Source: Trichoplax adhaerens (Eukaryota > Animalia > Placozoa). From it: a DNA stretch of 64,000 bases. How positions within the stretch are numbered: the stretch's first letter is position 1; each line of letters starts with the position of its first letter. Positions 19,294 through 45,176 of the stretch are shown in pieces. The stretch is taken from contig NW_002060973.1 in the NCBI RefSeq assembly GCF_000150275.1, positions 353,004 through 417,003 of the forward strand. The letters run 5' to 3'. A program made the position numbers and the translations under genes. Below the pieces are notes generated by a model. The model did not search any database and was not told the DNA's origin. It saw only the letters and a list, made by a program, of their open reading frames with translations.

Positions 19294-22200
19294 ATGGCGT
19301 TATCACTAGTTTTGCTTTGGTATTGCATTTTTCTTATTAATAATTCACAAGGTTCAGGTACGAAACTCTTTTCGCTTACAGGCAGTGCTGATTTAATGAT
19401 TACAAATCATGCAGCAACTACCATCAGTGAATGAATTTTAGGGAGATACCCTGTCTTATGATGTGTTGAATTTTTGACCCAAGAATCAGTGGATGTCTTT
19501 CTGAATAAACAACTGAATCATTTTATTTAAATATTTACTGTACTGCTTCTAATAGTCGTTAGTAGTGGTAAAGCACTTTTGCGATAATATACCAATAACA
19601 TTATCCAGGAAATTCTATTTGTTTTTGATATCCTTTGGATTAAATTTAAGGGTCAGATAAATGGCCGTTACAAGTACATTAAAAGGAATTATATTTACAA
19701 AGTAATTGTTAGTTTTTATGAGTGTAGTCTGAGTAGCAAGTTTTAATTCAGTGCTATTCAAATAAAATTTTCATTCCATTCCTAGTGCAGTATGTGTTGA
19801 CTTATCTGAATCAGTATTTATCGTTGGTCTGGATCATAATAAATAATATTTACCGATTTTATTGAGTGAGATATGAGCTTTACCGAGATCAATGCTTATT
19901 TAGTACGACAAAGTATATAAAATTATCTCTGTATTTGAATGAAACAAATTGATATACCAAACTGAACTTTTAGAAATGTAGTAGTTTTTGCTTTATCTTA
20001 AAGACACCTAATCACAGGCTTAAATAAATCTAGAAAGAATAAATTATTGAAAAGGCATTCACTTCGGCTAGTAACTACATAATATAATAGCCGTGAAATA
20101 TGGTCGCTTTAAAATAGACAATATAGCTACGAATTTCTATAAATTATCATTATTAATCAAAATTATTGAAATCCCCAGATGGCCTTTGATAAGAATATCT
20201 TAATGGATTTATATTCATTTACTGACAGTCAAGAAATGAATTTTATGTGTTTTATTATCACGTTGCAATAGAGATCCAGTGTCCTAAAACTTGTGATTGT
20301 CAGTTTGCTTCTAAAATACAATGCACAAATCCTATATTGACCACGTTTCCAACCTCAGGAGCAGTTTTATCTACTGTTAGGCAACTGTAAGTATTGTCTA
20401 TTAAAGTATCTTTATTATAGGTACTTAAATTTAAAGTTAAGCTTCCAGCTCCAATAAAGAATAATAGCGAATCCGACTTTTCTACGTCGTATATAGAAAA
20501 TGATGACTTTCTGCTAAAATAAATTCCACTTATAACTTGAAAGTTTAACATTTAATTAATGATTAATTTAATAATGAAATACAGAGTGATTATGGGAACA
20601 AAGATTCGATCTGTCGGAAAAGATAATCTCTTTAATTATCCAAATTTAACACTGCTGTAAGTCAAAGATATTGCTGGATACTGGTTCAATTACATATTTC
20701 CTTTAAATTAAATCACTTAGTCACGCTAATTTTTCTAATCAATGTCGTACATTGACAACTTAATAAATATTCAAGTTGAGTTTATAGATTATTACTACTC
20801 AGAGGTTGACCATTTTAATTTAGAAACTTAAAGAACAATAAAATTGAAGACATTCAAGATGGGGCCCTTGCAGGATTGCATAATTTAAAAACACTGTAAG
20901 TTGAAAAGACTCTTTTAATAGAGTACTTGTTTCTCACGAAAAATCTTCTCAAAATTTGAAGAATAGTCTCTACATATGCAAAAATGCTTGAGCTATTATT
21001 ATCATCATGATCTGCGAAGTATTTTCTATTAAGTCACTATGTATCGATTATCTAAATACGTCTGTCTTCTATATTACTTTATACAGAGTGCTTGATCAAA
21101 ATGTGCTGGATGATTTAATCAATCAGAGAACATTCGAAGGATTATCAAATTTAACAACTTTGTGAGCTACACGAGTACAATGAGGATGGAAATGTGCAAA
21201 TAAGAAAACAGATTTATCAATAAGTTGATAACATAATAGTCAGCAGCATTTACTATAATTTTATTGCTACAAAAAACTATAAAATGTTACTGGCTTTATC
21301 TTAACAATTAATTTGACAGTTATTAGTATAGTGTAGATATTATTTAGGAGCCTATAGTAGCTAAAGGGTTTCGATAGTATTACAACGTATTTATTAGAAG
21401 CACATCAGCCAGATCATCTTCTCTAAAATAACGTAGAAATCCTAAAATATATTATTTTATCATTTGAAAGTTGGCAATGTTGCACTAATTTTGAATCGGT
21501 TTGTCCATTTAGACATTTGGGATATAACAGGATAAAAAATATTATAGATGACGTTTTTGCCAGATTACATAGCTTGGAATCACTGTAAGTTTCCCTACAT
21601 CAGTACTGTCAATTTTTAATAATTTCCATGTTAATGTTGCAGTATCTAAGAACATTTAGCATTTTAGACTTGAGGATATACTATCTGAAGGATAATTCGC
21701 GTATTTCTAAACTATGATATTGTACTGTTTGTAATTCCTGAAACTTCGCTCTGTCCATCCATTGGTGAATAACATTAATGTCTCAAAAATACCGTGTTAA
21801 TGATTACTAAACTGGCATAGATCGTTGCACTACAACATGCTTCATGAATTAACTTCTCCAAGAATATTCCAGGGATTATCAAGATTGAAATATTTGTAAG
21901 CTAAAAATAAGTGATAAATAACATTATCCCGTAATAATAATGTTGATTAAGCGACAAACGTCCTATCGACTATAAATTTTAGTTTCTTTAAGATCATAAC
22001 ATAATATAAGTTGGTTCAATACTAGCAGCAGTTCCTATTTGTTTGACACTCATAGCAAATCATAATTAGTAAAAACCGATTTTGCTTTAGAGTACTAATG
22101 AAATAAAAACAGCTGAAACATCATCCGATGATTTAAGCAGTATGCACACTACGTAATAGAATCGCATCATAACTACTTGAAATGAGTTAGTAGCGATAAT

Positions 22201-25200
22201 TTTGAATTGACATTTATCAATTTAGGTACCTGTATAACAATAAGATAGAGAAGATCTCAGATGGAGTTTTTGCAAGCTTGCACAGCCTGCAAAAACTGTA
22301 AGTAATTGTAATAAAGCATAATTACTCTTCAATACAAATTATACAGCGATTGGGTGTTTGTTTACTTCCATAATAAGGTTTTCTTAATATATTACTGTTA
22401 TTCGCTAATGATTGCTATGCAAGCATTTAAACGATCTTCTTTATTCTAAAAATAACATTGTAACTGTTTATTTTCGAAATCTTGCTCAATTCGTTTATTG
22501 GTATATATTAGTAATAGCTCGAAATATTAATGACTGTAAAATTGATGTAGGTCTTTGCAGTACAATACGCTACACGATATAACTTCTCCGAGAATATTTC
22601 AAGGATTACCAAGTTTAAAAGACCTGTAAGCTATAAAACAGTAAATTAATAACGGCATCATCTGGGAATAATTTCGAATAAATTATTAGCATCCATAGAT
22701 TAAATAATCTTAATATTTATATTTAAATTATTTAAATATTTAATGTTCTTTGTAATCTCTGTACGATGTCAGATGACTCACTATTATAATAATTACCGTC
22801 CGCATAAGACTAATACGGCAGTTCAATAACTAAAACAACTGATTGTATAGTTGAGCATCAATAAAATAGCAAGAGCTAGAATATCTAGTAATGATTTAAA
22901 TGATATGCAAATAACATCATAGAGTGGCATCGTCCCACTTGCTAAAATACATAACTATAATTTTAACATTTTGGATTGGTTTTTGATGATCCAGGTACCT
23001 GCACAATAATAAGATTGATAGGATTGCGGACGGAGTTTTTGCAAGTTTGCATAACCTACAAGGGCTGTAAGTTACGAATCTTGCAGTAGAATAATTACTG
23101 TTTATTGAAAATTATACCAGTAATATATGATGTTACTCCTAGTCAGTTGAGGATACTTAGCTAGATTAAATGAGCTACAGCTTAAAGTTATCATGAAATA
23201 ATACAGTTATTGTATATTCTTTACTATTCAGTAACATAAGAGCTTTAAGTTACTTTATAGACTAACTAAAATAATGGTAACTTATAAATTTCTTTATGAT
23301 TTAACAACGTCTCTTCTTTAGTAATCTTATATGTTTATATAGACAATCTCTGTAAACTGTTCTAAATTCTAAAACTATGGTATAATTCTTAAATTGCTTA
23401 ATTATTGGGCTTTAATGATCATCATTTCAGATACTTGTATTCAAACATATTAACTACATTGAATTCTTCAAGAATCTTTGAGGGATTGTCAAACTTGAAG
23501 AAGCTGTAAGCTATGTAGATATACAGCTAGAATTTAAGATAATATGAGAAATATCAGTGGTATATTTGCGCCAACTTCTGTATCATCATAGCACATAGAT
23601 TCTAATTTGTATATCATATTGAATAGATTACTATATCCAGAAATATTTTAGTTCAGTGGTTTTTTATTTAGGAAACTGAATATTTGAAATACTTAGATCA
23701 ATGCATTGCTTGAAATCTGAGCATTGAGTGTTAACTATGAGTTTAACGGGAATTACGATATATTTTTCTTTGATATAGGTATTTACAGAAAAACAGGATA
23801 GAAAAAATTGGAGATGAGGTTTTCATAAACTTATATAATGTAGAGAAACTGTAAGTTATGGTACATACAATTCATTTTTAAGATCTAGGTCTTTGCAAAT
23901 TAAAGGAAATATTTACGTTAACTATAAAATCATATTATAATTTTTGAAGTTCAAATTAGCCTATCGATATCAATGCTTATTCTTAATCTCTCTCTGTTTA
24001 ATAATGTAGAGAATTAGAAGAAAACATATTGGATGGTATGAATTCTTCTGGAATTTTCAAAGGATTGTCAAACCTAAAAAGTTTGTAAGTTATACTGCTG
24101 CTTATCAGTTAATAACGACTGATACTATCTCTTTAAATCTATCGTTAATAAGCTGCAAGTTTATTATACTATGTTTAAAATTCATTCCATGCAATCTACT
24201 GTCTCCTTTTAAGACTACTATCTTTAGAATCATTGACTTGTACCATCTACTATATTTGTATGGTTACCATAACTGAAATCTATATTTAAACAATAAAGTT
24301 TTAACTATTGAAACACGTAGTTTATTTTCTGATTATACCCATCACTATTTCCTTACAGCAGCACTTACTGAAGTATATACCATAAATTTCGTTCAGTCAC
24401 CATCGCGTACATATTAAATAAATATTATGTACATGTTTTCATTGCAAAATTTATCTTGATGAATTATCTACTTCTCTAATATTAGCCAAGTTAAAAATTA
24501 CTCCAAGATCCGTCAAGTAATATAATATTTCATAAATATTAGAGAGACTATGAGACAGGATTTTAAGGATTTCTTACTTGAGAGTTGTTGTCTTGACTTT
24601 GATTCAATGTAATTTCGTTGCAGATATTTAGATAAAAATAAAATATCCTACGTTGCTGATGGAGTTTTTCTTCCAATAAAAGGGCTAACATATTTGTGAG
24701 TTTGTAAAAATGTAAACATTTAAAACATTTGTACATATGTATATTATAATTTAAAAGGTTACTACTAAGCTTAGTTTGACATATATTATCAGTCTTCGAT
24801 TATAAATTTATTATATCGATTATAAAGCTTTAGTCAAATAAGCAAATAGCACTTCTATGTCAGTAATATTTAGCAATAAGCTTAGATCAATTTCACTTAC
24901 CAATTTCAAATTTCGGTAAAATCTTTCAATACCTTGAAATATAGTATACAAAGTCACTCTAAGATTTGTGTCTAGTAAGATTAACTTCTGTATGGGCTGT
25001 ATTGGTATTCGCTAAATGTCGCAGTTGCAATTACCAACAAGCCGGTTATTATAGTTAGCTGAAAAAATTATTAAAATCATTCAGCATTTCTTTAGTCAGA
25101 GACGGACTCATTGTGCCAACACCATTGGCTTAATATTTGCGTTATGACTATTTTCGTTTTGTTGTATTAAATGATATTGCTTATAATAACTTAAAATACT

Positions 25201-28200
25201 GCCTATTTTCGACTATTCTAACTATCACCGTGCGATAAACAGTGGCCAAAAGGCTTAGTAGTTATTTCAATAGTAACTAATTCAGATTTATTTCTCTGAT
25301 GCACTTGCACTCTCATTATTAGGAACATTATTTTAGAAGTTTTTAACAAGTTCATTTATGCCAATTATAACAACGGAGATTAACATATCTTCAAGTATGG
25401 AATAATAATTTATCAACGTGCATGCTTCTAAAATCGATGATCAATTTTATCAGTTGTTTAATTAATTAAGCTCAATATACGTAAGTCAAAGATTATCTGA
25501 TCTTAACGGACTGTAGTTATTATTATTAAGTAAATTAAAATAAGATCCTACATGCTGATCATAATACCAATTTGATAAAGTCAATAACTCGCGTATTCAT
25601 ATTATCGGCTTAGGAACCAATATAATATTACACGTAACAGCAGTAAAGTTCTAGTTATAGCTATAAAAAGAGTAGGTATTCTAGACTAGTGAAGAGATAA
25701 AGGATTGATATGCAAAGATGATAAAATGATAGTCTATTTCCACGCTTAAAAATAAATAGCCTTTGCAATCAATTTGATGTGAAGCACTTTGATATTAGTA
25801 AAATTCATTCAGTTGCCCGGCTTTAAGAAGTAAATACATGTATTCAGAATATTATTATTCATAACTTTAAAATTATTACAATAATTATAACGCCATTTCA
25901 CTCTAAAAAGGATTGAATAAATTGCATTTTGAATTGACTAAAATATAATTGATTATTCACAGGAGGTTATCAAAAAATGGGATTCGTCATATAGATGACA
26001 TTCATATTAGTGATTTAAGTAACTTGCAGCAGTTGTAAGTTAGAAGTAAATCAATTCAATTAGGACAGATATGTAGATTCTGCATCTTATAATTTTATTG
26101 CTGTATGCTTTGGTAAAGTTTATTGTTTTCAATTCTTAGATCACTATCACGGAACAGAATTAGCGAATTGCCTGCCGGAGCATTTAAAAGCATGACCAAG
26201 TTACGGACATTGTAAGTACTTACTGCTCCATATTCAAAGTAAACTATTCGCCTAGTCAGGCATGAACAAAATATCGAACTTTTTAGATCGAAATAAGTTA
26301 AAATGCATTACCGCGTCATATATTTGCTTATTATTTCATCAAATTTTTGGAGATTGATATTTGTCAAAATCGATAGCTATTTGTACGATCGTTTAGAAAA
26401 ATACTTCACATTTTATGGATCATTATAAAAATATTTGTGGATATCAATTATTGAATATTTAGATATTTCTGTAAAAGCGTTAATACCAATAGTAAAAATT
26501 GGCTATGGACTAATTTACTCATCAGAAAAACTGTTTAAAGTGTGCACTGACCGTTAATTGATGGTATAGCATCACAGAATATAGATCATATTAGGTCTTT
26601 GTTAGTGTAACTGTTATAGGGAGTTAGATTAGTCGCCAGATTTGAGTTAGTCACTAATTGTCACGGTAGTGAATCTACCGTAATGAATGATAACTTACTT
26701 AATTTAGACATGTATATGTATCACGTTAAGATAGTTATTAATTTGGATATGTGCATGAATCATTTGACGACTTAATATAGCCGATACAAACCTGTTCCTA
26801 ATACCGGTTAAATTATACTAAATATGGTATATGAATTGTCAATGGTAAATTCAATATAAATCCTGTTAATTATAAGCTAGTGTAAACATAAAGTTAATCT
26901 ATAGTAATATCAAAAATTCATTGGATCAGACTAGGAATAGTTTAATGTATTCATTCATGTAGTCTCATTGGTCGAAATATATCACACATCGTAAACCGAT
27001 TTTATGACTACAAAAGCTATTTAAATGATTGATTTTGAATATTAAATTAGACTTGCATTTTCTAGAATAAAGATATAGTTAGAAGATTCCGAAAGTACAT
27101 TTCGCAGTTATTGTTACTTATCTAGGGTAATCTAATTAGTTTAGATTAGGCAAGTTTAGTTAAGTAACACTATTATAAGAGATTGACACAATTTTTCGTA
27201 GTTTAATAGATCCTTTATTATAGACTGTAAACCTTAAAATAATTAATTAGTTCTGTGGATGACGGTAAACAACGTCAGCCCTTATATTTGAGAATAATCT
27301 AGAATACCTACAAAATAATAAGATACAGCAGAATCGGACTATTAACTGTCGTAGTCAGCCTACGACAAGGAAACCTGGGCCTTTGAAGTTGCATGAATGC
27401 TAAGGCTACAACAGCCAAGCATGCCCCAACGGGCCAAGCGTAGACTAGTCTTAGGCTTTTAAAATAGTTTATTGAACCAAGGTAGTCTTGACATCCAAGA
27501 CTACTCTAACTACACGCGTACACTACACGGTCAGTCGACAGCTCAGCTGCTAGTGAGAGCGCTGGGCTTTATATACCTTAGCTCGGTTACACTCGGTGCA
27601 TAGCTTAGGAAAACAACTCTAAAACATACAGCTTTTGTATAGCCGACAGTCTATATGGTTTAGTATGGCAGATGGCGTAAACAACACTAATGAGTTATGA
27701 ACTAATTAAGGGCCAATTAACAATCAAAGGCTCAGCACAAAGTAACAGAAATTACTATTGTGTGAATATTAGTTATCACCTCTGTAAATGCACTGCTCTG
27801 CACCGAGTCTACAACAAGTATAACTAGACTACTAATAATGTTACAATTATCGCATAGCTAATAAATAAATGTTATTAACAATTAATAAGATCTTAATTAC
27901 TAATTACTAATTACTAAGGCTAATGCCACAATTAATTGACGGAGTATGTACTCCGTCACACTTATTAACATAATGTTACAGTACACCATATGAACTAGTG
28001 TTATTTCAAAATTACAAAATATTGTTTCTTCTATGCGATATAGAAATTGACATTATAAAATGTTTTATGCAGATGGTTATATGCAAACTCAATTAATATT
28101 ATTAACCAAGAAGCATGGAATAATTCTCTAGAATTACGTCTGATGTAAGTAGAAATGAAACATTAATGATGTCAAAAGTAGATAACAACCGAAAGTTTAG

Positions 28201-31200
28201 CTATCCACCGTATACGTCAAATAAACCATGAGTATAGAACAGTATTTTTTGATAATTTGTTCTTCTAGCATTCAATTACATTTTTACACAGTTGCTAACC
28301 AAGAATGTTTTTTTCAAAAATTATCTTAATAGCTTGTGATCTACATAGTTAAAGTATTCTATTAGTGATGCTAAACCCTACAATTATTCATAATCACGCA
28401 AGCTAAGGCAAAAAACTCAAGAGCTTCTTTCCAGACAAATCTTAAATTCTAATTTTGTATTTTCATGCATTTCGTGATTTAGCTTTTATCTCATATAACA
28501 ATCAATAAATTTCTAGATTAATAGCATCTTTAGCTAATACAACCATATGTGGCAGTGTTATATACTGTATTAGCGTAGAAATATCTGTGTTAGGATAATT
28601 TTGTTAGCCTATCCTTATTTAGCTAACTTCTAGTTTCAGTTCGAATCATTGTGTTTGTAACTTACTTATGGTAGATTGTAAATTGTCGTAGAAATGTCTC
28701 ATGATAGGACATATCGTAATCTGACTATTCTGTATTAGTCATCAGATGTCTATGTTCATAAATACTGTAGTCTGCATTAGGAAGCGCTAGCTAAAATTAA
28801 TATCTAATTCAGTGAATGATTCCAAAGTTAATCTTACTAACTATGACTTATGAACTAATGAAGAAGAGCATATAAATACAGTATATCGTATACTAAAGTT
28901 AATTCTTAAACTTAGTGTTTAACGTAAAATACGAGGCGTCTAAGTCTTTGTGTAGTCTGCTAGTAGAACAAAAGTGTTCCTGATAGTACAGATATCGTTT
29001 CTTGATACGTGGTTTAAGGAATTGGCTTATTGATCGTACATTGCGTTATCTTGTTGCAAAGCTATTTTGTGACACCATAGCTGCCTTTAAATCAAGTGAA
29101 TCAAATCTAATAAGCGCATTGTCGATATTGTAAAAAATAATTGTTTGTGTTGATATTAACTTAGACGAATTAGATAAATATTTAATAGTAAGTTAGTGTA
29201 TTCTATCAACAGAGATTTGTCCCATAACGATGTCACGAATATCAACGAATCCGGTTTATCACAATTTAAATACTTGAAAACATTGTAAGTTTGTTACTGT
29301 CAGTAGATATTCCAATGAGAACTTAAATATCTTATATGTCATGTTTATAACGCTAATCAATACGAGTATATGAAGCGAATTAAAAGTAAGTTTATTTAAC
29401 TTCGTAGAACCCTTGGCATAAATAATCTAGTTCAAATAGATGACTTTATCTTTTCTGAATTATCCGAAGTTTCAAGCTTGTAAGAAACTATTTTTGAATT
29501 CTCAAATATAGTAACATGGTCAAATATTTTTGGACTTTGCTTAACCATTCCATATTGTAATATTTTGTATGTTTTTCAATTTAATTTAATGACAGAAAGC
29601 TATATGGCAATGATTTAACATTGATCAGTACTTATTCCTTCTATGGACTATGGAATATGGAAAAATTGTAATGCTGTGCTTAATTATTTTAAAGCCTTGA
29701 GTTTACATGCATAATTATGCTCTTATTAATAATTGATGCATCTTATTACAAAGAAATCGACCTAGAAACTATCAGAAAAGTTTGTTGCTTATTAAATTTT
29801 ATATGATACTTACGATTTCTCACATATCAACTTAGGTACCTATTTGACAATAAAATAAGGGTCATCCTTCCGGAAGCTTTTGCTAATCTAAATAAGTTAG
29901 CTGTCGTGTAAGTAAGTGTATGTAATAGGTTAACGGTGAAGTGAAGCAATAAATAATGAATTAATTTAGTTTTATAACCCTATAGCTGTGTATTTTTTAT
30001 GCAGTATTAGTTTATAATTTAAGAACAACTATGCATTTTTAGTTCTTTAACGCTTTGCGCCGCTGCAAATGTTTAATAGTTACATTATCGATCAATTATA
30101 TTAATAAGCGAACTAGAATTGAGTAGTATTCCAAAAGTTTGATACTGCTGAATTAACTAGGGTATTTAATGAGTGAGATCAAATTGGTCTTTATCCAGTC
30201 CATAAAAGTCGAATATACGAGCCAGGCTTCTGTATATTGTTATAATCTATATTATATATAATTCAAAGATCATGGTGATTACGTCGTAGTTAGGCGTTAT
30301 AGTTGAATAAGCAACGTAAATTATGCAGTCTGTAGAGGCTGATGATGAAATGGCTTGATTATTGTGTACGCTACTCTTTGTACTTCGCATTCCATGCTGT
30401 AACTAATAGTCTACCGACTGTCTTCTACTAGTAAAATAATGTGTTACAATATTTGAAAGATTTGGTGTTTACAAGCTTTGCTAGTATAAATGGCTGAAAA
30501 ATACCTATTTTCTTACAATGCGAGCCTAAATATAATAGCAGTCAAGCTACTATCAGGATCCATTCCTTGCTATATTAATTTATTAAAAATGTGCACTTGG
30601 TTTATCCATGACCTAATGTGCCGCTAAACTGTGCGAACTATCGCTTAAGCTGATAAAGGTGTTGCTACAAAATTTGTAACGATATGCAACTACGGATACA
30701 GATCTAGAATGTGATAAAATTCTATATGATAGTAATTCCAACCATAAACTACAATTGAATTTGAGTATAGTATTACAATTTTAATGCGTTAATTCTTTTA
30801 AACCACCCATTTTCGTCACCGTCTAGTGATCTATCACGGAATGAACTAGTATCTATCAACAATCGTGTATTCAGCAAGTTGCCTTCTCTAGAAACATTGT
30901 ATGTCATACCTACTTTATATTCTTATTGCCTTTTCATTTATAAGCTTAAAATCTAATGCAACGAAATGCTATATTGGGCTAAAATTAAGTTTTGATTTGT
31001 CTTATTCTAGGCTTATTCCAGATAATTTTGTCTTCAACATTACTGCAGCCACTTTTGAAGGCTCTTATAATCTTAGTACCATGTAAAATATATTTAGACG
31101 TTAAAGTATTTTTAGTCATAATGCTATTAGATAATCTGGGACCTTCAAATACCACTTTTTCAGAAAATTATCTGGAAATAGTGTCCGGCAGATTTCTGGC

Positions 31201-34200: not shown

Positions 34201-37200
34201 TCCATTATCTAAATCAAATTATACTTTATGTTTCATCTACTGATTAAAATATAGTCTGTCATGACTTGTGAAGGAATTATTGAATCATATGATAGGCATA
34301 TCAATAACAATTACTTAATTTCGCTCAATCGGACTGTTTTCGCCGGATTATATAACCTCACTTATCTGTAAGTGTCAAATTAATAATTTATAGCCAATTT
34401 CAACGCATATTCGTATATGAATCTTATCATCTACAAAATCGAGAATATGGTTAAATTTCAAAAAATTCATTCAATTATGGCTATTAAACAGCATATCTAA
34501 TTATACTACGCTTCACAAACCAATTTTAATTTTCGATGACCTACTTAGGTTATTAGATGAAAATCAATTAACAGCCATTCAAGACTTTCAATTTGCTGAC
34601 TTATCTGCATTGCAGTATTTGTTAGTTATTATTTGCAATTTTTAATAGATTATACCAGTAAACAGAAGGAAGATTTTCATTATATCATTGAATATTCAAC
34701 ATTAGATTTTTAAGGTCGAATAAAATCAAACATATCCAAGCCGATTCATTTTCTGGCTTGGATCATATACAAGAGATGTAAGAGATCAAATATATCTTGT
34801 TACTTCAGTTATATTTTATTATATTTAAGTGTATTATGATACCTTCAATAAATCGAAATAATATAATTTAATATAAAGAACAAAGCTTGATTACGTGGAT
34901 GCATTTACGGATGATATGCTTGCAGTTGCAATTGAATGTGATGTTTTCTTTTAGCTTATATTTTATCTGTTTATATGTTGTCATGCTAGATTGCTCAATG
35001 GAAATCCTCTATATTTTGTAACCGATCTACCCTTAGGCAGCTTTAAAGTTCTTCATCACTTGTAAGATAATATTCTATATAATATGATATTTCAATATGA
35101 ATACTTAAAACGAAGTAAGCACAATCATAAAGTTAAGTCAAAGACTTTATTAGGCGGCAGTATGGATCTAAATTTTCTTCAAATTTTAGCAATTTAGAGA
35201 TTTACTACTTTTGAATTTACTATATATATATTAAAACACAATAAATCTCAGATTCGATCTTAGTAGCGTATTGATATCTACCTTCTGCACTTATGTAGAA
35301 TATTCACGAGCTATTGCATTAGATACGCATATATAATTTTATCGCTAGCATAGTAATGAATTAGAAACGTATCATTAAAAGACTATTTGTTCTATATCAA
35401 AATATTTTCATATTTGGTAGTTTCTAAGTTTTGCAATGCAATAATCAAATTTATTATTCTATCTTTTTATGGTTAGCTATGCTATGTGGTCTAACATTAT
35501 AAATTTTCTGTCTTTAAATAGAGGCCTATCGAAAAATAAACTAAGAAGTCTTAAAATTGCGTCCGTATCGAATATTACAAACAATATTTACGAATTGTAA
35601 ATGGGTTTATTATTTCCTAATTTCGATATTGTAAAATTTAAAATCAAAGAAATAGCTCATGAATAAATAGCAGTTGTAAGCTTAAAGAATGCCACCATGT
35701 CGATACTGTTCGTTGAATTGATTTGCCTGTGTCCCCCCTTAAAATACCTAAATTTTGTTGTATAATATCTATAATTGTGTAAGCTATAATATAGGTATTA
35801 AAGATAAATCTATTCAAGGTGATTAAACATAAAATCGAATTACTTTGTATCGATTATTGTATTCGTTATTTTTTCAATAGGGATTTATCCAATAATTTAA
35901 TGACCGAACTCAATATTCCTAAGAGCTTTCAATGTTTACACCATATGTAAGTTTATTTATCGGCAAATTTTGCATTTTATATAATAGAAGTAGATTAATT
36001 AAGCCATCAGATATAAATGACTTTGTTATGTGCTGCAAGTTATGAATCTACTGTTACTTTAACTCTATCTAGAATACTAAATATACCAAATATTTATTAC
36101 AGCAATATTTCTCATAATAAATTTGTCGACATTACAAGCATACATCTAAATAATGTTTCCTGCGTCTCATCTCTGTAAGTAAATGAAATTTTCCCAAATT
36201 CATAAATAAATCATTTTCACTTAATATCTTTTTAAATCTCCTATAAAATTTACTTGAAGAGAATTACGATATTTTAAGTATTGATTCAGAGTGAATTATC
36301 ATGTTTGGTAATGTCAAATATTTTACGAAACCGATAGCAAACCGAATATAATTATAAACTGAACTGAAATAGTTATCTATAAATGGAATTTAAAATGAAT
36401 TCATTCTCTTCACTAAATCTTTAGCGATATCAGTCAAAATAGAATCACTCGATTTCAATTCGACGTTTTTTCTTTCCTTAAAGATCCAACAACTCTCGCT
36501 GTTTTGTACGTGATTATAATTGGCAGAAAAACGTCATTAAACCATATCGTGATAAATTTACATTAGTTTGATTTCTAAATGTCATATTGTTTTTTATGCC
36601 GTGTAATAAAAGGAATATGTCCAGTAATCACTTGGAGTATGTCAAGCCTGAGATGTTTGCTCCAATATCACACTTAATCGAGCTGTAAGAATTTACATGT
36701 AAATTTGTTTGATTTGAATAGAATTACAAAATATCATTTCTCCTTACAAAGATAAAATAAAATAGAATAAAACTTTAAGCTAACTAACTGTCTTTTACAA
36801 ATTATTACCTCTAGTATTTTAATAAATCAACTAAACACTATAGAACGAAATTATAAAATTGTTCAAACTCGTATCTGATACTGTATTACGCATCATTGAG
36901 ATCGATTTATCAGGAAATTGAGAGCCAGAAAGGCTAATTAAATCGTGTTATGTATTAATTGTTTTTGCATGACATCATTAGGACCATTTATGACAATTAT
37001 CTTGAAACGTTAGACTTCTTGCAATTATTGCATCGTCTGAATATACTGTAAGTATTGTAAGTTACTATTTAATGTAACATATTCAAACACTACTCACATT
37101 TATTCGCATAGGTTCATCTAAGATATACACTATTTAATGAGAATTTTATATTGTACATTTATTCATTTAAAACTTGTTAGAGTGGTCGCCAAAAATCGAA

Positions 37201-40200
37201 TAAAAGATTTGAAAAGCGGCTACTTTAAAAACTCGACCAATTTGACACGTTTGTAAGAACCGATAATATTTAAGCTATTAAGTCATTATGTAGCAAGAAA
37301 TTGAAATTTTACATACGCAATGATTCTTACGTAATCTAATGTCGAACATAATATACGTAATAATAAGATGTTTGTAATGTTTAACGCCAATTTTGCTATC
37401 TATCGTAGAAACATGAGCTATAACAAAATCGAAACTCTTCGAAGTAGAACATTTGAGAAGGGTAGAAATATCTTGCGTTTGTAAGTTAAAAGAACCATAT
37501 ATATTAAATATACTCCACATTAGTATTCCTTAAAATTCATAAAATGCACTTTTGACCATTGTTTATAGAGACTTGGATCATAATAAGATTTCTTTTATAG
37601 AAAATGAAGCATTTCTCGGCTTATTAAAGTTACAGATTCTGTAAGCTAATGATTTCTATTAAGAAACATGATATAAAATAGCTATTTGCCGACTATTTTT
37701 CCTGAAAGAGATTAACTGCATATGATATTACGTTACTAGGGATATCAGTTATAACCGCATAATTTCATTAAAAGGAATATTCTCTCAAGATTTGACTCAC
37801 CTAATTTTACTGTATGTCAATATTGGATAACGTGTATCCTGTAATAGCTTAAATATTTTACTAGATCAGTGATATGGTACTGCTATAGATTAAAAATTGG
37901 CTTTAATTTAGCAGTAGAACAGTGAAACACAATTTTTCTGCTATGTACAAAACTTTAACTTTCTCTGCCAGTACAAGTTTAATACGAATAATCCAATATA
38001 GATTTTTAATATGATCAAATAAGTAAGCGTATGTAATTTAAAATTAGTAAATTCTCTGGATTTAGAAGCTGACATATCCAAAATATTTCATTAAAGACTA
38101 TCTAAAAGATTAATTTAGTCCTTTAATTTGTAGTAAATTTTTATCAGTAACTCATTATTAATTTTAGGATAGTTATAGCAGGCTTTCTTTACCGGGCCAT
38201 TAAATTATTTTATTTTAAATCGATAATATATTAATATTTTTTTTCAATCTCAATTTTATTATCTAATTTTTGTTTCACAAATTCAAGAAATTGTAATGGA
38301 AATCAAATCACTTCTATAGCTGGAGCACCGTTTTCTAATTTGAAAAAGCTTGACAAATTGTATGCTTAGTAATTATAGATTCTCTATCCTATCCTAGATA
38401 CTTAGTATAATTGGATCCATAAGATTACTAAAATTAAAAAAATTTAATTATTATTCTCCAATTAAAAATTATTTATATTTAGATATTTAAATCAAAATCA
38501 GTTAACAGAAGTGGCTCCTGATAGTTTTAATAATTTGATTCATTTGCATATCCTGAAGTATGTAATCTAGAAGAAACTTTTAACTGGCCTTAAAGGGCAC
38601 AAAATTGATTAATTTATTGTAAAATGATAAGTTGTGATATATAGCGATCACAAAATTCCAAATTTTAGAAAAATAAGGGCTTTATTGAATCTTATACAAA
38701 GATTAACTACACACAGCTCTACTCTAGCCGAGTACTACTACTAAAGACTTCTAGAACGAACTAACAGAATAATCTAAAGTTGCATGCTTCTATGCTTTTC
38801 GTAGCATTCGCAGCTACAATCCGCATGGCAACCTTTTACCTTATTTTACACTTAGTAAAATTATTCTTAGTAACACTATTCTACTGCAGACCATCATTAA
38901 TCCGATATGGATACGACTACAGTATTTACGTAGACGTTATTCACACCAGCAATAGTATAATGAATTAACCATATCCTAATATATGATTTGCAGTTCTATT
39001 TTTACCTGTAACCTTATTAGTAACTCAACACCTTACTGTATATAGTCATCTATACTTTAGCATAGAGTCTATACCACTATAGTCTATAGTTATGGCTACC
39101 AAATATCTCTTAGGATAAATATCTACCGCACATTATACTAAACATGGCTAACAGTCTACAATTACAATACTAAGTTACATTACACAAGTACTTAATGGTA
39201 ACTGCAATCATTTTGTGTATATCTCTCTTTGAAACAGCTCAATAGATCATAATAAACTTACCCGTTTATCCTGTCTATCAATCTCCGAAAATATCCATGA
39301 TTTGTAAGTAATACGATTACAACTTGTTCTTATTTATACCATTCAACTAAATCAATTAAATTTTTATATTATTTTAAATCAATGCATAATAATTATGGCA
39401 TTATGACAGAGTTGGTAGTAAAATTAAATCCGGCATTATTTCCAATTTTTCGATTTCGATTGTAATTGTATTGGCGAAATACTGCTCGCATTTGCGTATA
39501 TTCCTGTAATCATCCTTTTAAAATGGCTAAAGAATAGCCTTTCTCAATACGATTAGTTAAGCCATTCTACAGAACAAATTTAATTATTGCTACTGTCTTG
39601 ATAAATTTAACATTTTAATCTATCAGTACAATACTTAGAGTAAAATTCCAGTCTAGAAGTTCACATGCGTTGTTTCACTAATTAAAATTTGCAAAGACAA
39701 TTGTGCAATAATTAAATGAAATTAGTTTTAAGACGGGCTATGGAAGACTGATTACGAATATTTATACTAACTTTTATGATGCAATTGATTTAAGCATATT
39801 CTAACTATATTTATATTACTGGATGTATAATTTAGGAGTTTAAGTCATAACAATATATCCTATATCTCACCAAGTTGCAATAAAACATTTGGCAGTTTAC
39901 TGAAGAGATTGTAAGTCACAATTCATTTATTATCTCTTTTAAATCTAAAATAGAACTAAGACATATCAAAAACGACTATCTGTTATAGAGGACATATATA
40001 AATATGTAATGATCTCAGCTAATTGCAGTAATACGGTATGTGACTGATAGAATATGGACTTGCACTGCTTCTACTATGAGACTGTAATAGCACACGTCTA
40101 TGTACNNNNNNNNNNNNNNNNNNNNNNNNNNNNNNNNNNNNNNNNNNNNNNNNNNCGAGTAATGAGCAAGTTTTATTTAAGCTATCAAGATTACCTCCAG

Positions 40201-43200
40201 CGATGTAAGCAATGAAAAAAAATTAAATGATGATCTAATTTTCTCAGCCTAGTCTAGAACTCTGTCGTATTATTATAATAAAGTATAATCAGAAATTATT
40301 TAAAAACTTATTCTTGTTTTCGTACTTGAAAAATAGACTATTGGCAGGGAATAACATAAGCGCTATTCCGATATCGTTTTTAAAATGGAATATTTATCTT
40401 AGAACATTGTAAGTGAATCTTTTGTTAATCGATCTAATAATGACCACTTAGTATTTAAAAGAGAATTTAAGTATGGCGTAGAATAAATAAGAATTAGTCT
40501 TACATTATCCTACCGGAACCGTATCTAAATTTATGAAAAAGTATGATAAACCATATGAGAGTACTTTATATTAAATGATGCTGTCCATTATAAACTTAAC
40601 TAGTATAAGTAGAGCACAGCTAGGATATTGCGATTATTATAATAGCAGATAAATTTTATTTAACACGAATGTTTAAAATTAGTTAAGAATTCTGTGAAAG
40701 TTATTTATTGCAATTAAGCTATACTTGAAGCCTAGTCTTACGACTTTTCATTGTTTAGGTCCATTAGCAGCAACAAAATGTCACTATCTGCCATTAAACA
40801 AACCATGCGTGGCCTTTATATTGACGATGGCTGCATACCGCCATTAGTCTATAACTACGGAGAATATTACAGATGCCATCATTATTCGCTGTAAGTAAAC
40901 AATATGTCCGTAATTTTTATAATACAAATAACTTACATATAATTGCGCAAATCTTCTCGATAGGACTTGACTTCTTTTCAGTATCTAGAATATTCTTACC
41001 TCGAATGACTAATCTCATCATTTATTTTTATGCAAAACTGACTTGATCAGAGACTTGAGCGACTGTGGACTGAATAAAATTCCTTTGGATATTTTTATCC
41101 ATCTTCATGGCTTTTTAAAAGTCTTGTAAGTCAATTTAAGTGGCAACAATTATCATATATAGTTTCTTTAACCTAAAACGTTGAAAGAATCTACGAATAG
41201 GACTATAGGTATTTCATTTTTTTATCTGATTTCTTAATTAGCTTCCATTATATCAAATTTAATTTTGATGTATTGATAGTAATATTTCTATTTTCTATTT
41301 CATCGTATTACATTTTAATACTTTAATACATTTATAACAAACAAAGCCTATTAACCATTGAACAGTAAAATTTCTTACAATTAATTCAATTTTGAATACA
41401 CGAGCTTATAAAAGTAAAAATTTCATATTATCATCCACAGTTAATTTTAAGACTAATGAGAAATATACGAATGTTTTCATTTACAACTTATGTTCATAGC
41501 CTGCTAGTAACTCACAAATTCAATGAGTACTATAATTTTGAAGGATATCAACGTTTTGATTTTCTTCAATAATATCCTAAAAATTGTTACGGAAGTTTAT
41601 TGGCATCGTTTCTTTACTGGATAATTCAATGTGAGATTATCAACTGAATCAGTTGAAATACCATTAAACATCCAAAATAGGAATAAGTGTCATTTATCTT
41701 CTGCCATGAAATCTGTAACAGGTTGAAGATACCTAAAATGCTAATTTCCGCCGAAATTAGAGCATCAATTACAGCGCACCCTTATGCTAGTACCTGATAT
41801 TTCAATAATTATACAGCACTATAATGCTAATGATAGTCTATATTTCAAATTTTATTTTAATCTTCCATATTAAAATATTTTCCTTTCCACCTTATTGAGC
41901 AACAGAACACTCAATAATAACAACATCGAAAATATGGATGCGTCAGCCATATTTCGAGATAGTGATCACAATTTACGAGAACTGTAAGTTCATTTATAAG
42001 CTATTCTTTCACTTAGGTATCGTTGACAGGAATGCAACCTTTGCTGAAGTTAAATTTCTTTTGATGCAGAACATCATTTAAATAAAATATATATTATCAT
42101 TATTTTATCTATTGCTTCCTAGATAACATCGTAATGACATGCAATAAATGCTAAGTATTGACTGAATAGCTATTAAATTCCAATGTAGGCATTTGGCCAA
42201 TAACAAAATATTGAACTTCACGAATTCTAATAATATACAATTTAATGCATTAAAGATACTGTAAGTAGCAAAAGTTTGCTCTATATAAACTTTTAGACTG
42301 TGAAAATGAAATAATGATAGTCTGTATTTTTTCGAATTTCGTCAATTATTCAGAGACGTCGCTAAAAACCGGCTAACTGATATTTGCGGAAGATCAGATT
42401 TATTAGGAATCGCACCCTATGTATTCGATATGTAAGTATTCGTTTCTTAATGATTTTTAACCAAGTAGCTATAAATATGTTAATTATCTGTGGTTTATAC
42501 GTAACTACAGATATTTAGATTTCAATCAAATCCGAGTTTTAAAACCAAGATGTTTTGGAACCCTATTCAAGCTACAGAAACTGTAAGTACTATTATCGCT
42601 AAAATTTATGGAGCGAGATAACTACTCACAATTACAGTAGTTTAATAGCCTCACTGCTACTACGATATAGCTCTTGGCATAAGAGATAATGCCGTACCTC
42701 ACCATTTCATCATCAGCTACGGCCCATTTGGATACTTTATTTTATGCGAACCATTACAAATAGATAACTGTTTAAGTGATGCACTGTGTATGAAATAAAC
42801 TTTGTCGTAATTTAAATTATTCAGTTTACTTAGATTAAATATTGTACTATTTCTAATCTCATTCTCTCTAAGATCAATTAAATCGAATCCATTAGTGGCT
42901 TTAAAGGAAGTTTCATTTTATGGCTCAGCTACCTTAGGCGCGGTGTAAGTTAGATGACCATAAACATCTGATTTTGTAGATTTAATCGAAATTTTATTAT
43001 TGTTAGTTACCGGTACTGATCTAGAAGTACTCGCCAAATTTGTTACCGAAATCAGTAATATCTCAAAAAATTATCAGTTAAAGCTTCTATATAATAAGTT
43101 AAAATTGAAATATTGAAAGAGTTGCATTAATAGTTTGAATAAAATCGTACTTCGGTGGATTAACACGAATTAAACGTCGCTTCTGCGGCGATGCATGAAA

Positions 43201-45176
43201 AGATCTCAAATTGAGTAAACTTTACCCTTTCATATAACTATCCTAAAGCTAATTTCTTACAGATATGATTGTTACAATTAAATATTATAGTACTTCAAGA
43301 ACATTTGTAATCAATGTTAATATTAACTATTCATTTTGTAATTTCTTATTTCATTTGGACGATTAAATATCGGCATGTTAGAGATTCTACTCGCGCATAT
43401 TTATGCTGCATTGTTCCTGCAAAGATTACTACCTGCTCGCCATCTCCTGATTTAGATTCTGCTTCAAGTTGTGAAAATATTCTTGCTCATACGACTTTAC
43501 AATTAGCTGTTTGGATTATGGCTATCGCTGCGTTCATTGGAAATATAATGGTCATCGCCAATAATCGTTCTGATAAAACTCGCAAAACGAGCAAAGCTAC
43601 TGAATTAGTCTTCACGAATTTAGCATTGTCTGATTTCTTAATGTCAATATATCTAATTATCATTGGAATCGGCGATTTCGTATATCGTGATCGTTATGCT
43701 CACAATACTGAAGAATGGCTTAGAAGTCCTACTTGCGTCATAGCATCATTTTTAATATGTACATCAAGTTTAATGTCAGTTCTTATGATGTTGTTTATAG
43801 GCATCGATCGTTACACAATTACTTCAGATCCCTTTGCATCATCGGATACAAGATATAAAAGGACTAAAATATTACTCGTATTAGGATGGCTACTAGTAGG
43901 AGTTTTCGTAGGCATACCAGTTTTTATGAGTATTAACCAACCCGGCGACAGGCGTCTATATCAGTTAAGTTCAATTTGCTCTCCAAGTAATTTAAGCGAT
44001 CGATTCTATGCTAGTTGGACAATTTCATTTGTAGTAATTCAACTTTTATGCTGGATTTTAACTTTAGCACTTTATTTAAAATTAGTAACTATAGTAAGTA
44101 AAACGCAGCGTTCTGTTCGAAGTAGTGCTCAATCACGCAGTTTTGCCGTTGCTATTCGGATATCACTGATCATAATAACAGATTTATTGGCTTGGCTACC
44201 AGTTTATATTATTTCCGTTATGTCCATCGCACAAGGCACCCTAAATATATTCATTCTACAATTTGCTGTCATCTTAGCTATTCCACTGAATTCGGCTATT
44301 AATCCATATATTTATACGGCTACTGGAACGGCTTGTTTTTATCGCTTAACAACAACTAAGAGCAAAAGAAATTCAATGTACTATTCAGCAACACGAAATA
44401 CTTCTATGAATCAGTTTACAACTAATATCAATAAATCGAAGTTTACTAGTACTAATCGGCTTTCTAAATATGAGACTGTGATTAACGATATTGATGATCG
44501 TATTCCTGAAAAACTAGACGACAGCAATCAAGACCTTAATGAAGTTACTAACAATCAAACTGTTCAAGTAGTCAATAAGAAAGAACATAGTTCTCATTCT
44601 ACACAGCCCATCGTCACTGTAATATATTATGCTCATAATGTAGGCTTCTTATTAAGTATCCGGCGAAGTAAAAACTGTAGCACAGTTTCGTGCTTAGCTG
44701 CTAATGTATTAGCTATCAACGGCGATCTGGACTCTTCTCGTGATACAAATTTAAAAAATTGCATCATGATTGATGTTAGTAACTTCTTGCAGATTTATAA
44801 ACTGGAAAAAATAACTTGGAAAAGTGAAGAAACCGATGCAGCCGTAATTAATACCGGTATTATAAATCCTGCATTTGATGGGAATGATGATTGGAATACT
44901 AAGTTTGCTAAAAATAGAAAAGATATTTTAGCAATAAGGACTGATATAAATCATCAAGCATGTGATCGCATTGACGGAGAAGAAGACAGTGTGCAACATA
45001 ATCAACTAAGTAATGTTCAGTATAGGAACGCAGGAGTACAAGGTAGGTATTATCCTCCTTTATTTCTTACTAGAACAAAATAAATCATTGTTGTAATGGA
45101 AGTTATTTTTCATTTATTACCAGATGAACAAGATAGAAGAAGTAAAAATTCCATTGTAAGAAGCAATTCTTGGTAG
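19294..45176 (+). CDS. Giant leucine-rich-repeat GPCR (LGR; RXFP/type-C-like hinge, no LDLa module): signal peptide, LRRNT, 54 LRR exons, 7TM; ~1,958 aa
   Basis: Signal exon 19294-19357 (MALSLVLLWYCIFLINNSQGS). LRRNT exon 20272-20386 (CPKTCDC..C). Phase-2 LRR exons start at 20585, 20824, 21087, 21513, 21821, 22226, 22551, 22995, 23431, 23779, 24010, 24624, 25963, 26140, 28073, 29213, 29408, 29596, 29836, 30827, 31011, 31164, 31340, 31532, 31883, 32157, 32369, 32997, 33331, 34296, 34549, 34706, 34990, 35522, 35881, 36103, 36425, 36613, 36982, 37181, 37569, 37740, 38288, 38483, 39238, 39836, 40337, 40759, 41051, 41906, 42189, 42354, 42511, 42873. They are 66-81 nt (one is 132 nt), all multiples of 3 and stop-free. 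Hinge+7TM exon 43382-45042; last exon 45124-45176. Confidence 0.88.
26659..27169 (+). mobile_element. Possible solo LTR (unassigned family)
   Basis: TGTCAC...GTAACA ends, flanks CTAAT/CTATT (1 mismatch), AATAAA near 27066. Only one copy in the window. Confidence 0.3.
27254..27960 (-). mobile_element. Probable solo LTR (family C) in an intron of LRR-GPCR gene 1
   Basis: Minus strand runs TGTGACGG...CCGTCATCCACA, with TATATAAAGCCC (plus 27564-27575) followed by AATAAA (plus 27468-27473). GC-richer than the flanks. No TSD found. Confidence 0.55.
28548..29074 (+). mobile_element. Solo LTR family A, copy 1 (internal ~110-bp deletion)
   Basis: TGT...ACA ends with a perfect 5-bp TSD CCATA/CCATA and an internal TATAAAT. 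Highly similar to 33471-34107 and 61311-61940. Confidence 0.85.
33471..34107 (+). mobile_element. Solo LTR family A, copy 2
   Basis: TGTGACA...TGTGACA ends, flanks AATTT/AATAT, TATATAAAT at ~33902. Aligns along its length with copies 1 and 3. Confidence 0.85.
38633..39184 (-). mobile_element. Solo LTR family B, copy 1
   Basis: TGTGATA...TTACA ends, flanks TAAGT/CAAGT. Collinear with 48047-48611 and with the reverse complement of 51794-52352. Confidence 0.8.
40106..40155. other. Assembly gap (50 N) inside an LRR-GPCR intron
   Basis: Run of 50 n. The true size is unknown and it could hide further LRR exons. Confidence 0.99.
43382..45042 (+). CDS. Hinge, rhodopsin-class 7TM and long C-tail exon of LRR-GPCR gene 1
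   Basis: Hinge YLCC..CSP..D..SSCENIL as in RXFP/LGR type C. TM1 GN, TM2 NLALSDFLM, DRY, TM6 TDLLAWLP, TM7 PLNSAINPYIY. Acceptor AG at 43380-43381, so the ORF-track start at 43314 is intronic. Confidence 0.95.

What the first reader, a model, noticed from the sequence alone, without database searches (positions are those of the whole stretch)
19294..45176. A GPCR with ~54 leucine-rich repeats, each on its own interchangeable phase-2 exon
Seen: 54 stop-free LRR exons, every one a multiple of 3 nt and flanked by phase-2 introns, fused to a relaxin-receptor-type hinge and 7TM. Known: glycoprotein-hormone receptors, RXFP1/2 and LGR4-6 have roughly 7-17 LRRs, and one LRR per phase-2 exon is their usual layout, so the size is what stands out (~1,330 aa of LRR). 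Each exon ends on the first two bases of a hydrophobic codon (TT/CT/AT/GT), so any exon can be joined to any other without breaking the frame or the LxxLxLxxN register. Inference: a modular receptor whose ectodomain could be diversified by exon skipping or copy-number change, e.g. for microbe, self/non-self or large-ligand recognition, conceptually like Dscam or VLR.
Basis: partly seen in the sequence, partly recalled or inferred. Interest (0 to 1): 0.9.

Follow-up and report, generated by a model that had tools for sequence, protein, structure and literature searches.

The report
Giant 56-repeat LRR receptor gene, Trichoplax
This is a real, transcribed gene of the placozoan Trichoplax adhaerens for a hormone-receptor-type GPCR whose outer part has 56 leucine-rich repeats, one per small exon; it is an extreme member of a placozoan receptor expansion described in 2022, and nothing shows that its exons are shuffled.

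Summary
On the + strand lie a signal-peptide exon (19294), an LRRNT exon, 56 single-LRR exons and a hinge plus rhodopsin-type 7TM exon (43382). All LRR exons are multiples of 3 nt with phase-2 introns. By arithmetic the protein is about 2,011 aa.

The assembly gap hides the start of an 87-nt LRR exon ending at 40204. A Trichoplax sp. H2 contig and read contigs show it intact and in frame.

RNA contigs splice the last ten LRR exons to each other and to the 7TM exon, with no alternative joints. The other 46 exons rest on conservation: four paralogous genes carry the same exons in the same order.

The organism is Trichoplax adhaerens. Public protein models of this gene are fragments of 370 and 661 aa. 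Hauser et al. 2022 described 41 placozoan-specific LGRs with unusually many LRRs (example: 34). This scan also noted 49- and about 60-repeat genes elsewhere in this genome.

The Dscam/VLR-like reading is not supported. Core repeats are 22% identical within the gene but 51-67% identical to their positional partners in three of those paralogues. dN/dS is 0.18, and the concave face is not more variable than the convex. Only an N-terminal two-exon block varies in copy number between paralogues.

The parts
19294..19357 (+). Exon 1: start codon and signal peptide (64 nt, ends in phase 1)
   Evidence: Read from the sequence: hydrophobic 21-aa leader, donor GTACGA. No RNA evidence obtained.
20272..20386 (+). 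Exon 2: LRRNT cysteine cap (115 nt, phase 1 in, phase 2 out)
   Evidence: Pfam LRRNT, E 2.7e-4. Gene 2 has a matching cap at 53077-53154. No second cap lies inside the array.
20585..24695 (+). N-terminal LRR block: 12 exons, mostly alternating 72 and 75 nt in a two-exon super-repeat of about 730 bp. Exon starts: 20585, 20824, 21087, 21513, 21821, 22226, 22551, 22995, 23431, 23779, 24010, 24624.
   Evidence: Exons two, four or six apart are about 50% identical. Copy number differs between paralogues: 12 here, roughly 15, 10 and 5 elsewhere.
25963..39910 (+). Core LRR exons 13-47 (35 exons). Starts: 25963, 26140, 28073, 29213, 29408, 29596, 29836, 30827, 31011, 31164, 31340, 31532, 31883, 32157, 32369, 32997, 33331, 34296, 34549, 34706, 34990, 35522, 35881, 36103, 36425, 36613, 36982, 37181, 37409, 37569, 37740, 38288, 38483, 39238, 39836.
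   Evidence: Each has a positional counterpart, in the same order, in most or all of four paralogous genes. Purifying selection. Frames and splice sites are kept in strain H2 from exon 32157 onward, the part the H2 contig covers. No direct RNA evidence obtained.
40106..40204 (+). LRR exon 48, 87 nt. Its first half lies in the assembly gap 40106-40155; it ends at 40204.
   Evidence: H2 contig L040:8184-8270 gives the whole exon in frame. Paralogues have the same exon. An RNA contig of run X5 runs through it and joins 40204 to 40337.
40337..42944 (+). Core LRR exons 49-56: 40337-40408, 40759-40890 (132 nt, with a Cys-bounded insertion), 41051-41125, 41906-41983, 42189-42260, 42354-42431, 42511-42582, 42873-42944
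   Evidence: All eight GT..AG joints appear in spliced RNA contigs of runs X5 and/or X6. Collinear in paralogues.
43382..45042 (+). Exon with the short Cys-rich hinge, 7TM domain (DRY and NPxxY present) and a long C-terminal tail
   Evidence: RNA joint 42944 to 43382. Pfam 7tm_1, E 6.7e-23. RXFP1 structure 7tmw, E 3.3e-31, including the hinge.
45124..45176 (+). Possible last small exon with the stop codon
   Evidence: Only the H2 protein model P0151 supports it. No RNA joint was seen. The alternative is read-through to the stop at 45083.

Best explanation
One gene of Trichoplax adhaerens encodes a roughly 2,011-aa leucine-rich-repeat GPCR (LGR). Its parts in order are a signal peptide, an LRRNT cap, 56 typical 24-residue LRRs each on its own phase-2 exon, a short Cys-rich hinge, and a rhodopsin-type 7TM domain with intact DRY and NPxxY motifs. 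It belongs to the placozoan-specific LGR expansion. Within that expansion it is part of a tandemly duplicated subfamily of at least five genes that share a fixed 44-exon core, plus an N-terminal two-exon block that varies in number. Shown: the exon anatomy, splicing of the last ten LRR exons to the 7TM exon, one-to-one exon conservation between paralogues, and purifying selection. Inferred: all 56 exons are spliced constitutively. Inferred: the array forms one long, position-specific binding surface; by analogy with solved 24-residue LRR arcs it is too long for a single horseshoe, so it is probably a spiral or a segmented solenoid. Inferred: binding of a large extracellular ligand is passed through the hinge to the 7TM domain, as in RXFP1 and the glycoprotein-hormone receptors. 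The ligand is unknown.
For: Exon scans give about 55 LRR exons on the + strand and essentially none on the - strand. Pfam finds 7tm_1 and LRRNT and LRR_8 for single exons. GT..AG joints in RNA contigs of two RNA-seq runs link 40204, 40337, 40759, 41051, 41906, 42189, 42354, 42511, 42873 and 43382. The gap exon is intact in H2 and in read contigs. Exon lengths sum to 6,036 nt, in frame. There is one LRRNT and one 7TM per gene and no internal cap. All 55 curated exons are collinear with the genes at window 53-83 kb, C1413:15.7-41 kb, C1384:495-523 kb and C1410:4822-4842 kb. dN/dS is 0.18 overall and 0.05 at scaffold positions. Positional identity of 51-67% compares with 22% within the gene. H1 and H2 exons differ by 0.62% with splice sites kept. 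The family is described in PMC9545775.
Against: RNA evidence covers only the last ten LRR exons and the 7TM exon. Continuity of exons 1-47 with them rests on conservation and on the lack of any internal start, cap or terminal exon. The RNA data are assembled contigs, which drop rare isoforms. The H2 assembly has a 1-nt deletion in the 132-nt exon, and its annotation splits the locus into three genes. The window itself is out of frame at the gap edge until corrected from reads. No spliced full-length protein was folded or searched, so the shape of the ectodomain is inference only.
Confidence: 0.8

Rival explanations
1. One reading: the symmetric phase-2 exons are used combinatorially, by exon skipping or cassette choice, to make many receptor variants, as in Dscam or VLR.
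For: Any exon can be joined to any other without a stop, and the junction codon is nearly always hydrophobic. The H2 protein model P0151 omits exon 42189-42260. The family is large and lineage-specific (PMC9545775).
Against: Both RNA runs include every exon in the part covered, 42189-42260 among them, and show no alternative joint. Core exons are as unlike each other as unrelated LRRs (9% identity at variable positions), yet each keeps its own identity and place across paralogues. That is the opposite of an array of similar alternative cassettes. Concave-face dN/dS is not raised. Phase-2 single-LRR exons are the ordinary layout of LGR genes (own knowledge).
Confidence: 0.06
2. The locus is two or more genes, as the H2 annotation has it: a secreted LRR-only protein upstream and a short LGR with a few LRRs downstream.
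For: The H2 annotation calls three genes in the equivalent region: 578 aa, 74 aa and 661 aa. The JGI model P0001 is also partial. RNA evidence obtained here starts only at the gap exon.
Against: No internal signal peptide, LRRNT, stop-bearing terminal exon or 7TM lies between 20.4 and 43.3 kb. Phase-2 exons cannot start or end a protein by themselves. The break in H2 coincides with a 1-nt deletion in the 132-nt exon, which RNA of this species shows intact. Five paralogues keep the same whole array between one cap and one 7TM.
Confidence: 0.08
3. The gene is a decaying duplicate, a pseudogene that is still transcribed.
For: It lies in a tandem family with some broken members: stops occur in some 7TM copies elsewhere. 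The window is frameshifted at the gap edge. H1 has lost a T at the donor of exon 38483. Expression looks low.
Against: All 56 exons are open with good splice sites. The gap-edge shift is absent from reads and from H2. The lost T merely moves the donor by 3 nt, in frame. dN/dS is 0.18 against the closest paralogue. The RNA is correctly spliced.
Confidence: 0.05

Closest known systems
Placozoan-specific LGRs of Trichoplax adhaerens (Hauser, Koch and Grimmelikhuijzen 2022, PMC9545775; example Tadh-LGR15 with 34 LRRs)
   Same: Same species. It is an LGR without an LDLa module, with an unusually high LRR number and a short hinge of its own, and it belongs to a large lineage-specific expansion (46 LGRs, 41 of them placozoan-specific).
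   Different: This gene has 56 LRRs, well above the published example. Its place among Tadh-LGR6-46 could not be established, because the paper lists only TriadITZ identifiers. The exon-level anatomy, the conserved 44-exon core and the variable N-terminal block are not in that paper as far as I could read it.
Relaxin receptors RXFP1/RXFP2 and snail GRL101 (type C LGRs)
   Same: RXFP1 is the closest solved structure to the 7TM (7tmw, E 3.3e-31, against FSHR 5.5e-24 and LGR4 1.5e-13). The shared hinge motif just before TM1 is C-x-P, D, SS, EN, LA. NCBI names the H2 relatives 'GRL101-like' and 'Relaxin receptor 2'.
   Different: There is no LDLa module, the defining tethered activator of type C. 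There are 56 LRRs instead of about 10. The ligand is unknown.
Glycoprotein-hormone receptors and LGR4-6 (type A and B LGRs)
   Same: Signal peptide, LRRNT, LRR array, hinge and rhodopsin-type 7TM. One LRR per exon with phase-2 introns (own knowledge of FSHR/LHR/TSHR gene structure).
   Different: They have 9-18 LRRs and long type-specific hinges, and their 7TM similarity is weaker.
Other very long LGR-like proteins in public databases (Nematostella 3,282 aa, Saccoglossus 2,799 aa, Ptychodera 1,963 aa and others)
   Same: Related 7TM domains (28-33% identity) and a very large ectodomain.
   Different: Their ectodomains are mosaics of MAM, CUB, LDLa, C-type lectin and other domains with only a few LRRs, or are two receptors fused. 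None of the eight long hits scanned with Pfam is a long pure LRR array.
Dscam exon clusters and lamprey VLR cassettes
   Same: Modular units that can be joined in frame. VLR also uses LRR modules.
   Different: Those systems use arrays of mutually similar alternatives chosen per cell. Here each unit is unique, fixed in position, conserved between paralogues and included in the RNA seen.

Membership tests
LGR (leucine-rich-repeat-containing class A GPCR) | Rhodopsin-type 7TM domain | tested here: met
   Pfam 7tm_1, E 6.7e-23, 81.9 bits against a 30.5 cut-off. DRY and NPxxY are read in the ORF.
LGR (leucine-rich-repeat-containing class A GPCR) | Extracellular LRR array on the same transcript, N-terminal to the 7TM | tested here: met
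   Spliced RNA contigs join ten LRR exons to the 7TM exon. The remaining 46 exons are inferred from collinear paralogues.
LGR (leucine-rich-repeat-containing class A GPCR) | Signal peptide and N-terminal cysteine cap (LRRNT) | tested here: inconclusive
   LRRNT scores 20.9 bits, below the Pfam cut-off of 25.8, though the CP..C.C pattern is present and conserved in gene 2. The signal peptide was judged by eye only.
LGR (leucine-rich-repeat-containing class A GPCR) | Cys-containing hinge with the conserved motif before TM1 | tested here: met
   The HMMER alignment to RXFP1 covers the hinge motif.
Type C LGR (RXFP1/2, GRL101) | LDLa module(s) at the N-terminus | tested here: not met
   The signal-peptide exon is followed directly by LRRNT. 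Pfam finds no Ldl_recept_a in exons 1-2.
Type C LGR (RXFP1/2, GRL101) | 7TM groups with RXFP in a phylogeny | not tested
   Only a ranking of PDB hits is available, with RXFP1 best. Hauser et al. place the 41 placozoan-specific LGRs outside types A-C.
Placozoan-specific LGR clade (Hauser et al. 2022) | T. adhaerens LGR, not type A/B/C, with an unusually high LRR number | tested here: met
   Species identified from a 100% match to XP_002117970. It has 56 LRRs and no LDLa. There are 101 related 7TM matches in the genome.
Placozoan-specific LGR clade (Hauser et al. 2022) | Identity with one of Tadh-LGR6-46 | not testable with these tools
   Supplementary Table 2 gives only CoGe TriadITZ identifiers.
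Combinatorial-exon diversity systems (Dscam-like) | Arrays of mutually similar alternative exons | tested here: not met
   Core exons are 22% identical overall and 9% at variable positions, and positional partners in paralogues are the best hits.
Combinatorial-exon diversity systems (Dscam-like) | Alternative joints in RNA | tested here: not met
   Only consecutive joints appear in two RNA runs over the last ten exons. The test is limited: these are contigs, and one region of the gene.

The most novel reading that the evidence does not exclude
The giant-LRR LGR subfamily may be the placozoan counterpart of Toll-like receptors: pattern-recognition or environment-sensing receptors for microbes, food or self/non-self that signal through a 7TM domain. 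Placozoans lack true TLRs and already couple other pattern-recognition domains (C-type lectins) to GPCRs (Kamm et al. 2019, PMC6321704). A 56-repeat solenoid of about two turns would then be a new kind of very large recognition surface on a GPCR. My data do not exclude this, but they give no positive sign of it either: there is no excess change on the concave face.
Probability: 0.18. Interest if true: 0.75.

Novelty: new member of a known kind. Interest (0 to 1): 0.42.

Why it matters
This appears to be one of the longest uninterrupted LRR ectodomains on any GPCR. Every other very long LGR-like protein I checked with Pfam is a domain mosaic instead. Public protein sets (NCBI, UniProt) hold only 370- and 661-aa fragments of this gene, so placozoan receptor catalogues built on them understate these genes. 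The conserved 44-exon core shared by at least five tandem paralogues shows the whole array is a maintained, position-specific structure. That raises two concrete questions: what a 56-repeat solenoid looks like, and what ligand needs it in an animal with six or so cell types and no neurons.

Tried and rejected
1. Strict LRR regular expressions on six-frame translations found almost nothing, because every repeat is split by an intron. I replaced them with a phase-2 exon scan and an HMM built from the clear exons.
2. My first boundary for the exon at 40759 (81 nt, GC donor) was wrong. RNA shows 40759-40890, 132 nt.
3. The window seemed frameshifted in the gap exon relative to the paralogues. The H2 contig and the read contigs show that the window lacks one A at the gap edge.
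4. A protein search for transcript-derived models reaching further upstream returned only annotated partial paralogues.
5. Supplementary Table 2 of Hauser et al. could not be mapped to this gene.
6. The intronic piece seen in RNA (41190-41782) is single-copy, and the stretch 19000-47500 has no Rfam match, so I take it for unspliced or nascent RNA.
I fetched less.
8. Only exon-by-exon searches by reference and length arithmetic were done.
9. A literature check on the largest known LRR numbers gave nothing citable.


Full report
ORGANISM AND LOCUS. The 7TM part of the finding is 100% identical to XP_002117970 (TRIADDRAFT_33361, a partial 370-aa model) of Trichoplax adhaerens. It is about 95% identical to RDD40647.1, a 661-aa 'GRL101-like' protein of Trichoplax sp. 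H2. The window is G000:C1384:353004-417003 of a 105.6-Mb assembly, and the contig length equals that of the NCBI scaffold carrying XP_002117970. G+C is about 30% throughout.

CHECK OF THE OBSERVATION. I scanned for exons flanked by AG and GT, with a length that is a multiple of 3 and an open frame at offset 1. Scoring was first by a simple LRR consensus, then by an HMM built from the clearest exons. The scan finds about 55 LRR exons on the + strand between 20585 and 42944, and a second run of them from 53388 onward. The - strand of the whole window gives only scattered low scores.

The curated list has 55 visible LRR exons: 72 nt x38, 75 x9, 66 x3, 78 x3, 81 x1 and 132 x1. Donors are mostly GTAAGT and acceptors TAG or CAG. 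The median intron is 224 nt, range 79-1861. Exons end in TT (25), CT (21), AT (6), GT (2) or AA (1). Successive junction codons read L 45, I 6, V 1, N 1.

Nine of nine regular exons searched singly by reference have LRR_8 or LRR_4 as best Pfam family. Upstream lie an ATG at 19294 with a hydrophobic leader (exon 19294-19357, phase 1) and an LRRNT exon at 20272-20386. Downstream lies a single exon with a short Cys-rich hinge and a 7tm_1 domain (E 6.7e-23) with DRY and NPxxY.

THE ASSEMBLY GAP (TESTED FIRST, AS ASKED). Laying contigs of public runs on 40160-45200 showed an RNA contig that ends an exon at 40204, joins it to 40337, and runs 151 nt further left into the gap. The paralogous genes have an 87-nt LRR exon at this position. 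Against them the window looked shifted by one base.

The independent Trichoplax sp. H2 assembly (L040, NOWV01000095.1) spans the gap with about 176 nt instead of the estimated 50. It shows the complete 87-nt phase-2 exon in frame. The 30 letters that the DNA and RNA read contigs give left of 40161 are identical to H2, and together with the laid part they read three A's where the window has two. The window therefore carries a one-base error at the gap edge.

So the gap hides the first half of a 56th LRR exon, and the two sides are continuous and in frame. With it the exon lengths sum to 6,036 nt, or 2,011 codons plus stop, of which about 1,381 aa are LRR.

TRANSCRIPTION AND SPLICING. Runs X1 and X3 cover exons and introns alike and behave as DNA. 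Runs X5 and X6 are RNA-seq libraries. Their contigs carry GT..AG joints 40408/40759, 40890/41051, 41125/41906, 41983/42189, 42260/42354, 42431/42511, 42582/42873 and 42944/43382, plus the loose ends that link 40204 to 40337.

One 842-nt contig runs from exon 41051 through six further exons into the 7TM exon. The last ten LRR exons are thus spliced consecutively to each other and to the 7TM exon. No alternative joint appeared, although contigs can hide rare isoforms. I had one read-laying run, so exons 1-47 have no direct RNA evidence here.

ONE GENE, NOT SEVERAL. The window holds only one 7TM ORF in this stretch. There is no LRRNT-like sequence inside the array: the best score is 31, equal to background, against 97 for the cap of the next gene at 53077-53154.

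I fetched DNA around four close paralogues whose 7TM is 68-82% identical. They lie at window 53-83 kb (extended), C1413:15.7-41 kb, C1384:495-523 kb and C1410:4822-4842 kb on the minus strand. A collinear dynamic-programming match of exon peptides places a counterpart for 55, 54, 49 and 47 of my 55 exons, in the same order.

From exon 13 onward the correspondence is almost entirely one to one. This includes the odd exons: the Cys-containing ones, the 66-, 78- and 81-nt ones, and the 132-nt one with its insertion. This is strong evidence that all predicted exons are real and belong to one conserved array, bounded by one cap and one 7TM. The H2 annotation splits the region into three genes. Its break coincides with a 1-nt deletion in the 132-nt exon in the H2 assembly, an exon that RNA of this species shows intact.

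ARE THE EXONS INTERCHANGEABLE? Within the gene, the 31 core exons of 72 nt are on average 22% identical to one another, and 9% at non-scaffold positions. That is no more alike than arbitrary LRRs. The same exons are 51%, 67% and 52% identical to their positional partners in three paralogues (41-60% at non-scaffold positions). The positional partner is the best hit for 22/28, 29/29 and 24/28 exons.

Against the closest paralogue, dN/dS is 0.18 overall: 0.05 at scaffold positions, 0.24 at concave-face positions and 0.28 at convex ones. Synonymous sites are near or beyond saturation for the other two genes. Between strains H1 and H2, exons differ at 0.62% of bases (23 changes, 13 altering a residue), with every splice site kept.

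The array therefore behaves as a fixed, position-specific surface under purifying selection, not as a set of alternative cassettes. The symmetric phase follows simply from each intron lying inside the conserved Leu codon. That is the usual layout of LGR genes (own knowledge of FSHR, LHR and TSHR gene structure).

WHAT DOES VARY. Exons 2-12 form a two-exon super-repeat (72 plus 75 nt, period about 730 bp). Exons two, four or six apart are about 50% identical. The number of exons in this block is 12 here and roughly 15, 10 and 5 in the paralogues. Gene 2 carries a duplicated exon pair with identical peptides at 58004-58968. Copy-number change by exon-pair duplication is therefore real, but it is confined to the N-terminal block and seen between genes, not between transcripts.

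COMPARISON WITH WHAT IS KNOWN. The best solved-structure match of hinge plus 7TM is relaxin receptor RXFP1 (7tmw, E 3.3e-31). It is followed by FSHR, LHCGR and TSHR (about 1e-22 to 1e-24) and LGR4 (about 1e-13). The defining LDLa module of type C is absent, however.

Hauser, Koch and Grimmelikhuijzen (2022, PMC9545775) re-annotated T. adhaerens. [quoted passage not shown] Their table lists only TriadITZ identifiers, so I could not tell which one this gene is.

In a scan of 1.84 billion representative proteins, no model of this gene or its close paralogues is longer than 510 aa. Thirteen of the 150 listed hits are longer than 1,700 aa. The seven of these that I scanned with Pfam are mosaics of MAM, CUB, LDLa and lectin domains with few LRRs, and a 1,604-aa hit is two receptors fused.

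Earlier notes of this scan describe two more giant LGR genes in the same genome (about 60 and 49 repeats), with the same verdict. This thing has thus been found before on other DNA of this genome.

MECHANISM. Shown: a secreted-pathway leader, cap, 56 LRRs, hinge and a 7TM with intact activation motifs, transcribed and spliced at least at its 3' end. Inferred from the LGR family: a large extracellular ligand binds the LRR surface, and the signal passes through the short disulfide-bonded hinge to the 7TM, then to G protein or arrestin. Inferred from solved 24-residue LRR arcs (own knowledge): 56 repeats exceed one horseshoe, so the ectodomain should spiral or be kinked at its irregular repeats.

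The ligand is unknown. Placozoans lack true TLRs and link other pattern-recognition domains to GPCRs (PMC6321704). A recognition role for microbes or food is therefore possible, but my data give no positive sign of it.

VERDICT. The gene is real and is an extreme member of a published placozoan family. The Dscam/VLR-like inference is not supported.

Noticed in passing
window 41190-41782: A stretch inside the 780-nt intron between exons 41051 and 41906 is present in RNA contigs of both RNA runs (590 and 249 nt), at a depth like that of the spliced contigs. It is single-copy in the genome, and the stretch 19000-47500 has no Rfam match. It is probably nascent or intron-retaining RNA, but a separate small transcript is not excluded.
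   Followed up: partly
window 28667-29074 and 33700-34107: A repeat of about 408 bp sits in two different introns of the gene. The H2 copy matches both places, at 95.8% and about 98.5%, and the same open-frame strings appear twice. It is probably a small mobile element.
   Followed up: no
window 38555 (donor of exon 38483): H1 lacks a T that H2 has. This destroys the GTAAGT donor of a 72-nt exon, and the next GT, 3 nt on, gives a 75-nt exon that stays in frame with an Asn junction codon. It is either a real strain difference or a Sanger assembly error.
   Followed up: partly
L040:8820-8955 (H2 equivalent of window 40759-40890): The H2 assembly has a 1-nt deletion in the 132-nt exon, which would shift the frame. 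The H2 gene model starts downstream of it. H1 RNA shows the exon intact.
   Followed up: partly
window 53077-64000 and on to G000:C1384:437240: A second giant LGR gene lies in tandem on the same strand. It has an LRRNT at 53077-53154, about 58 LRR exons and a 7TM exon about 19 kb beyond the window's end. It includes a duplicated exon pair with identical peptides at 58004-58262 and 58710-58968.
   Followed up: partly
window 40156-40161: The letters at the right edge of the assembly gap disagree with the read contigs and with H2: there is a C for an A, and one A is missing. The gap is about 176 nt, not 50.
   Followed up: yes
window 37543-37641, 38484-38558, 43362-44318: The NCBI model XP_002117970 (P0001) joins two distant LRR exons directly to intron sequence before the 7TM exon. 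It is a mis-joined partial prediction.
   Followed up: yes
window 45043-45123: The H2 model removes a small 3' intron, so that the protein ends at 45176 and not at the read-through stop at 45083. No RNA joint for it was seen in the runs laid.
   Followed up: partly
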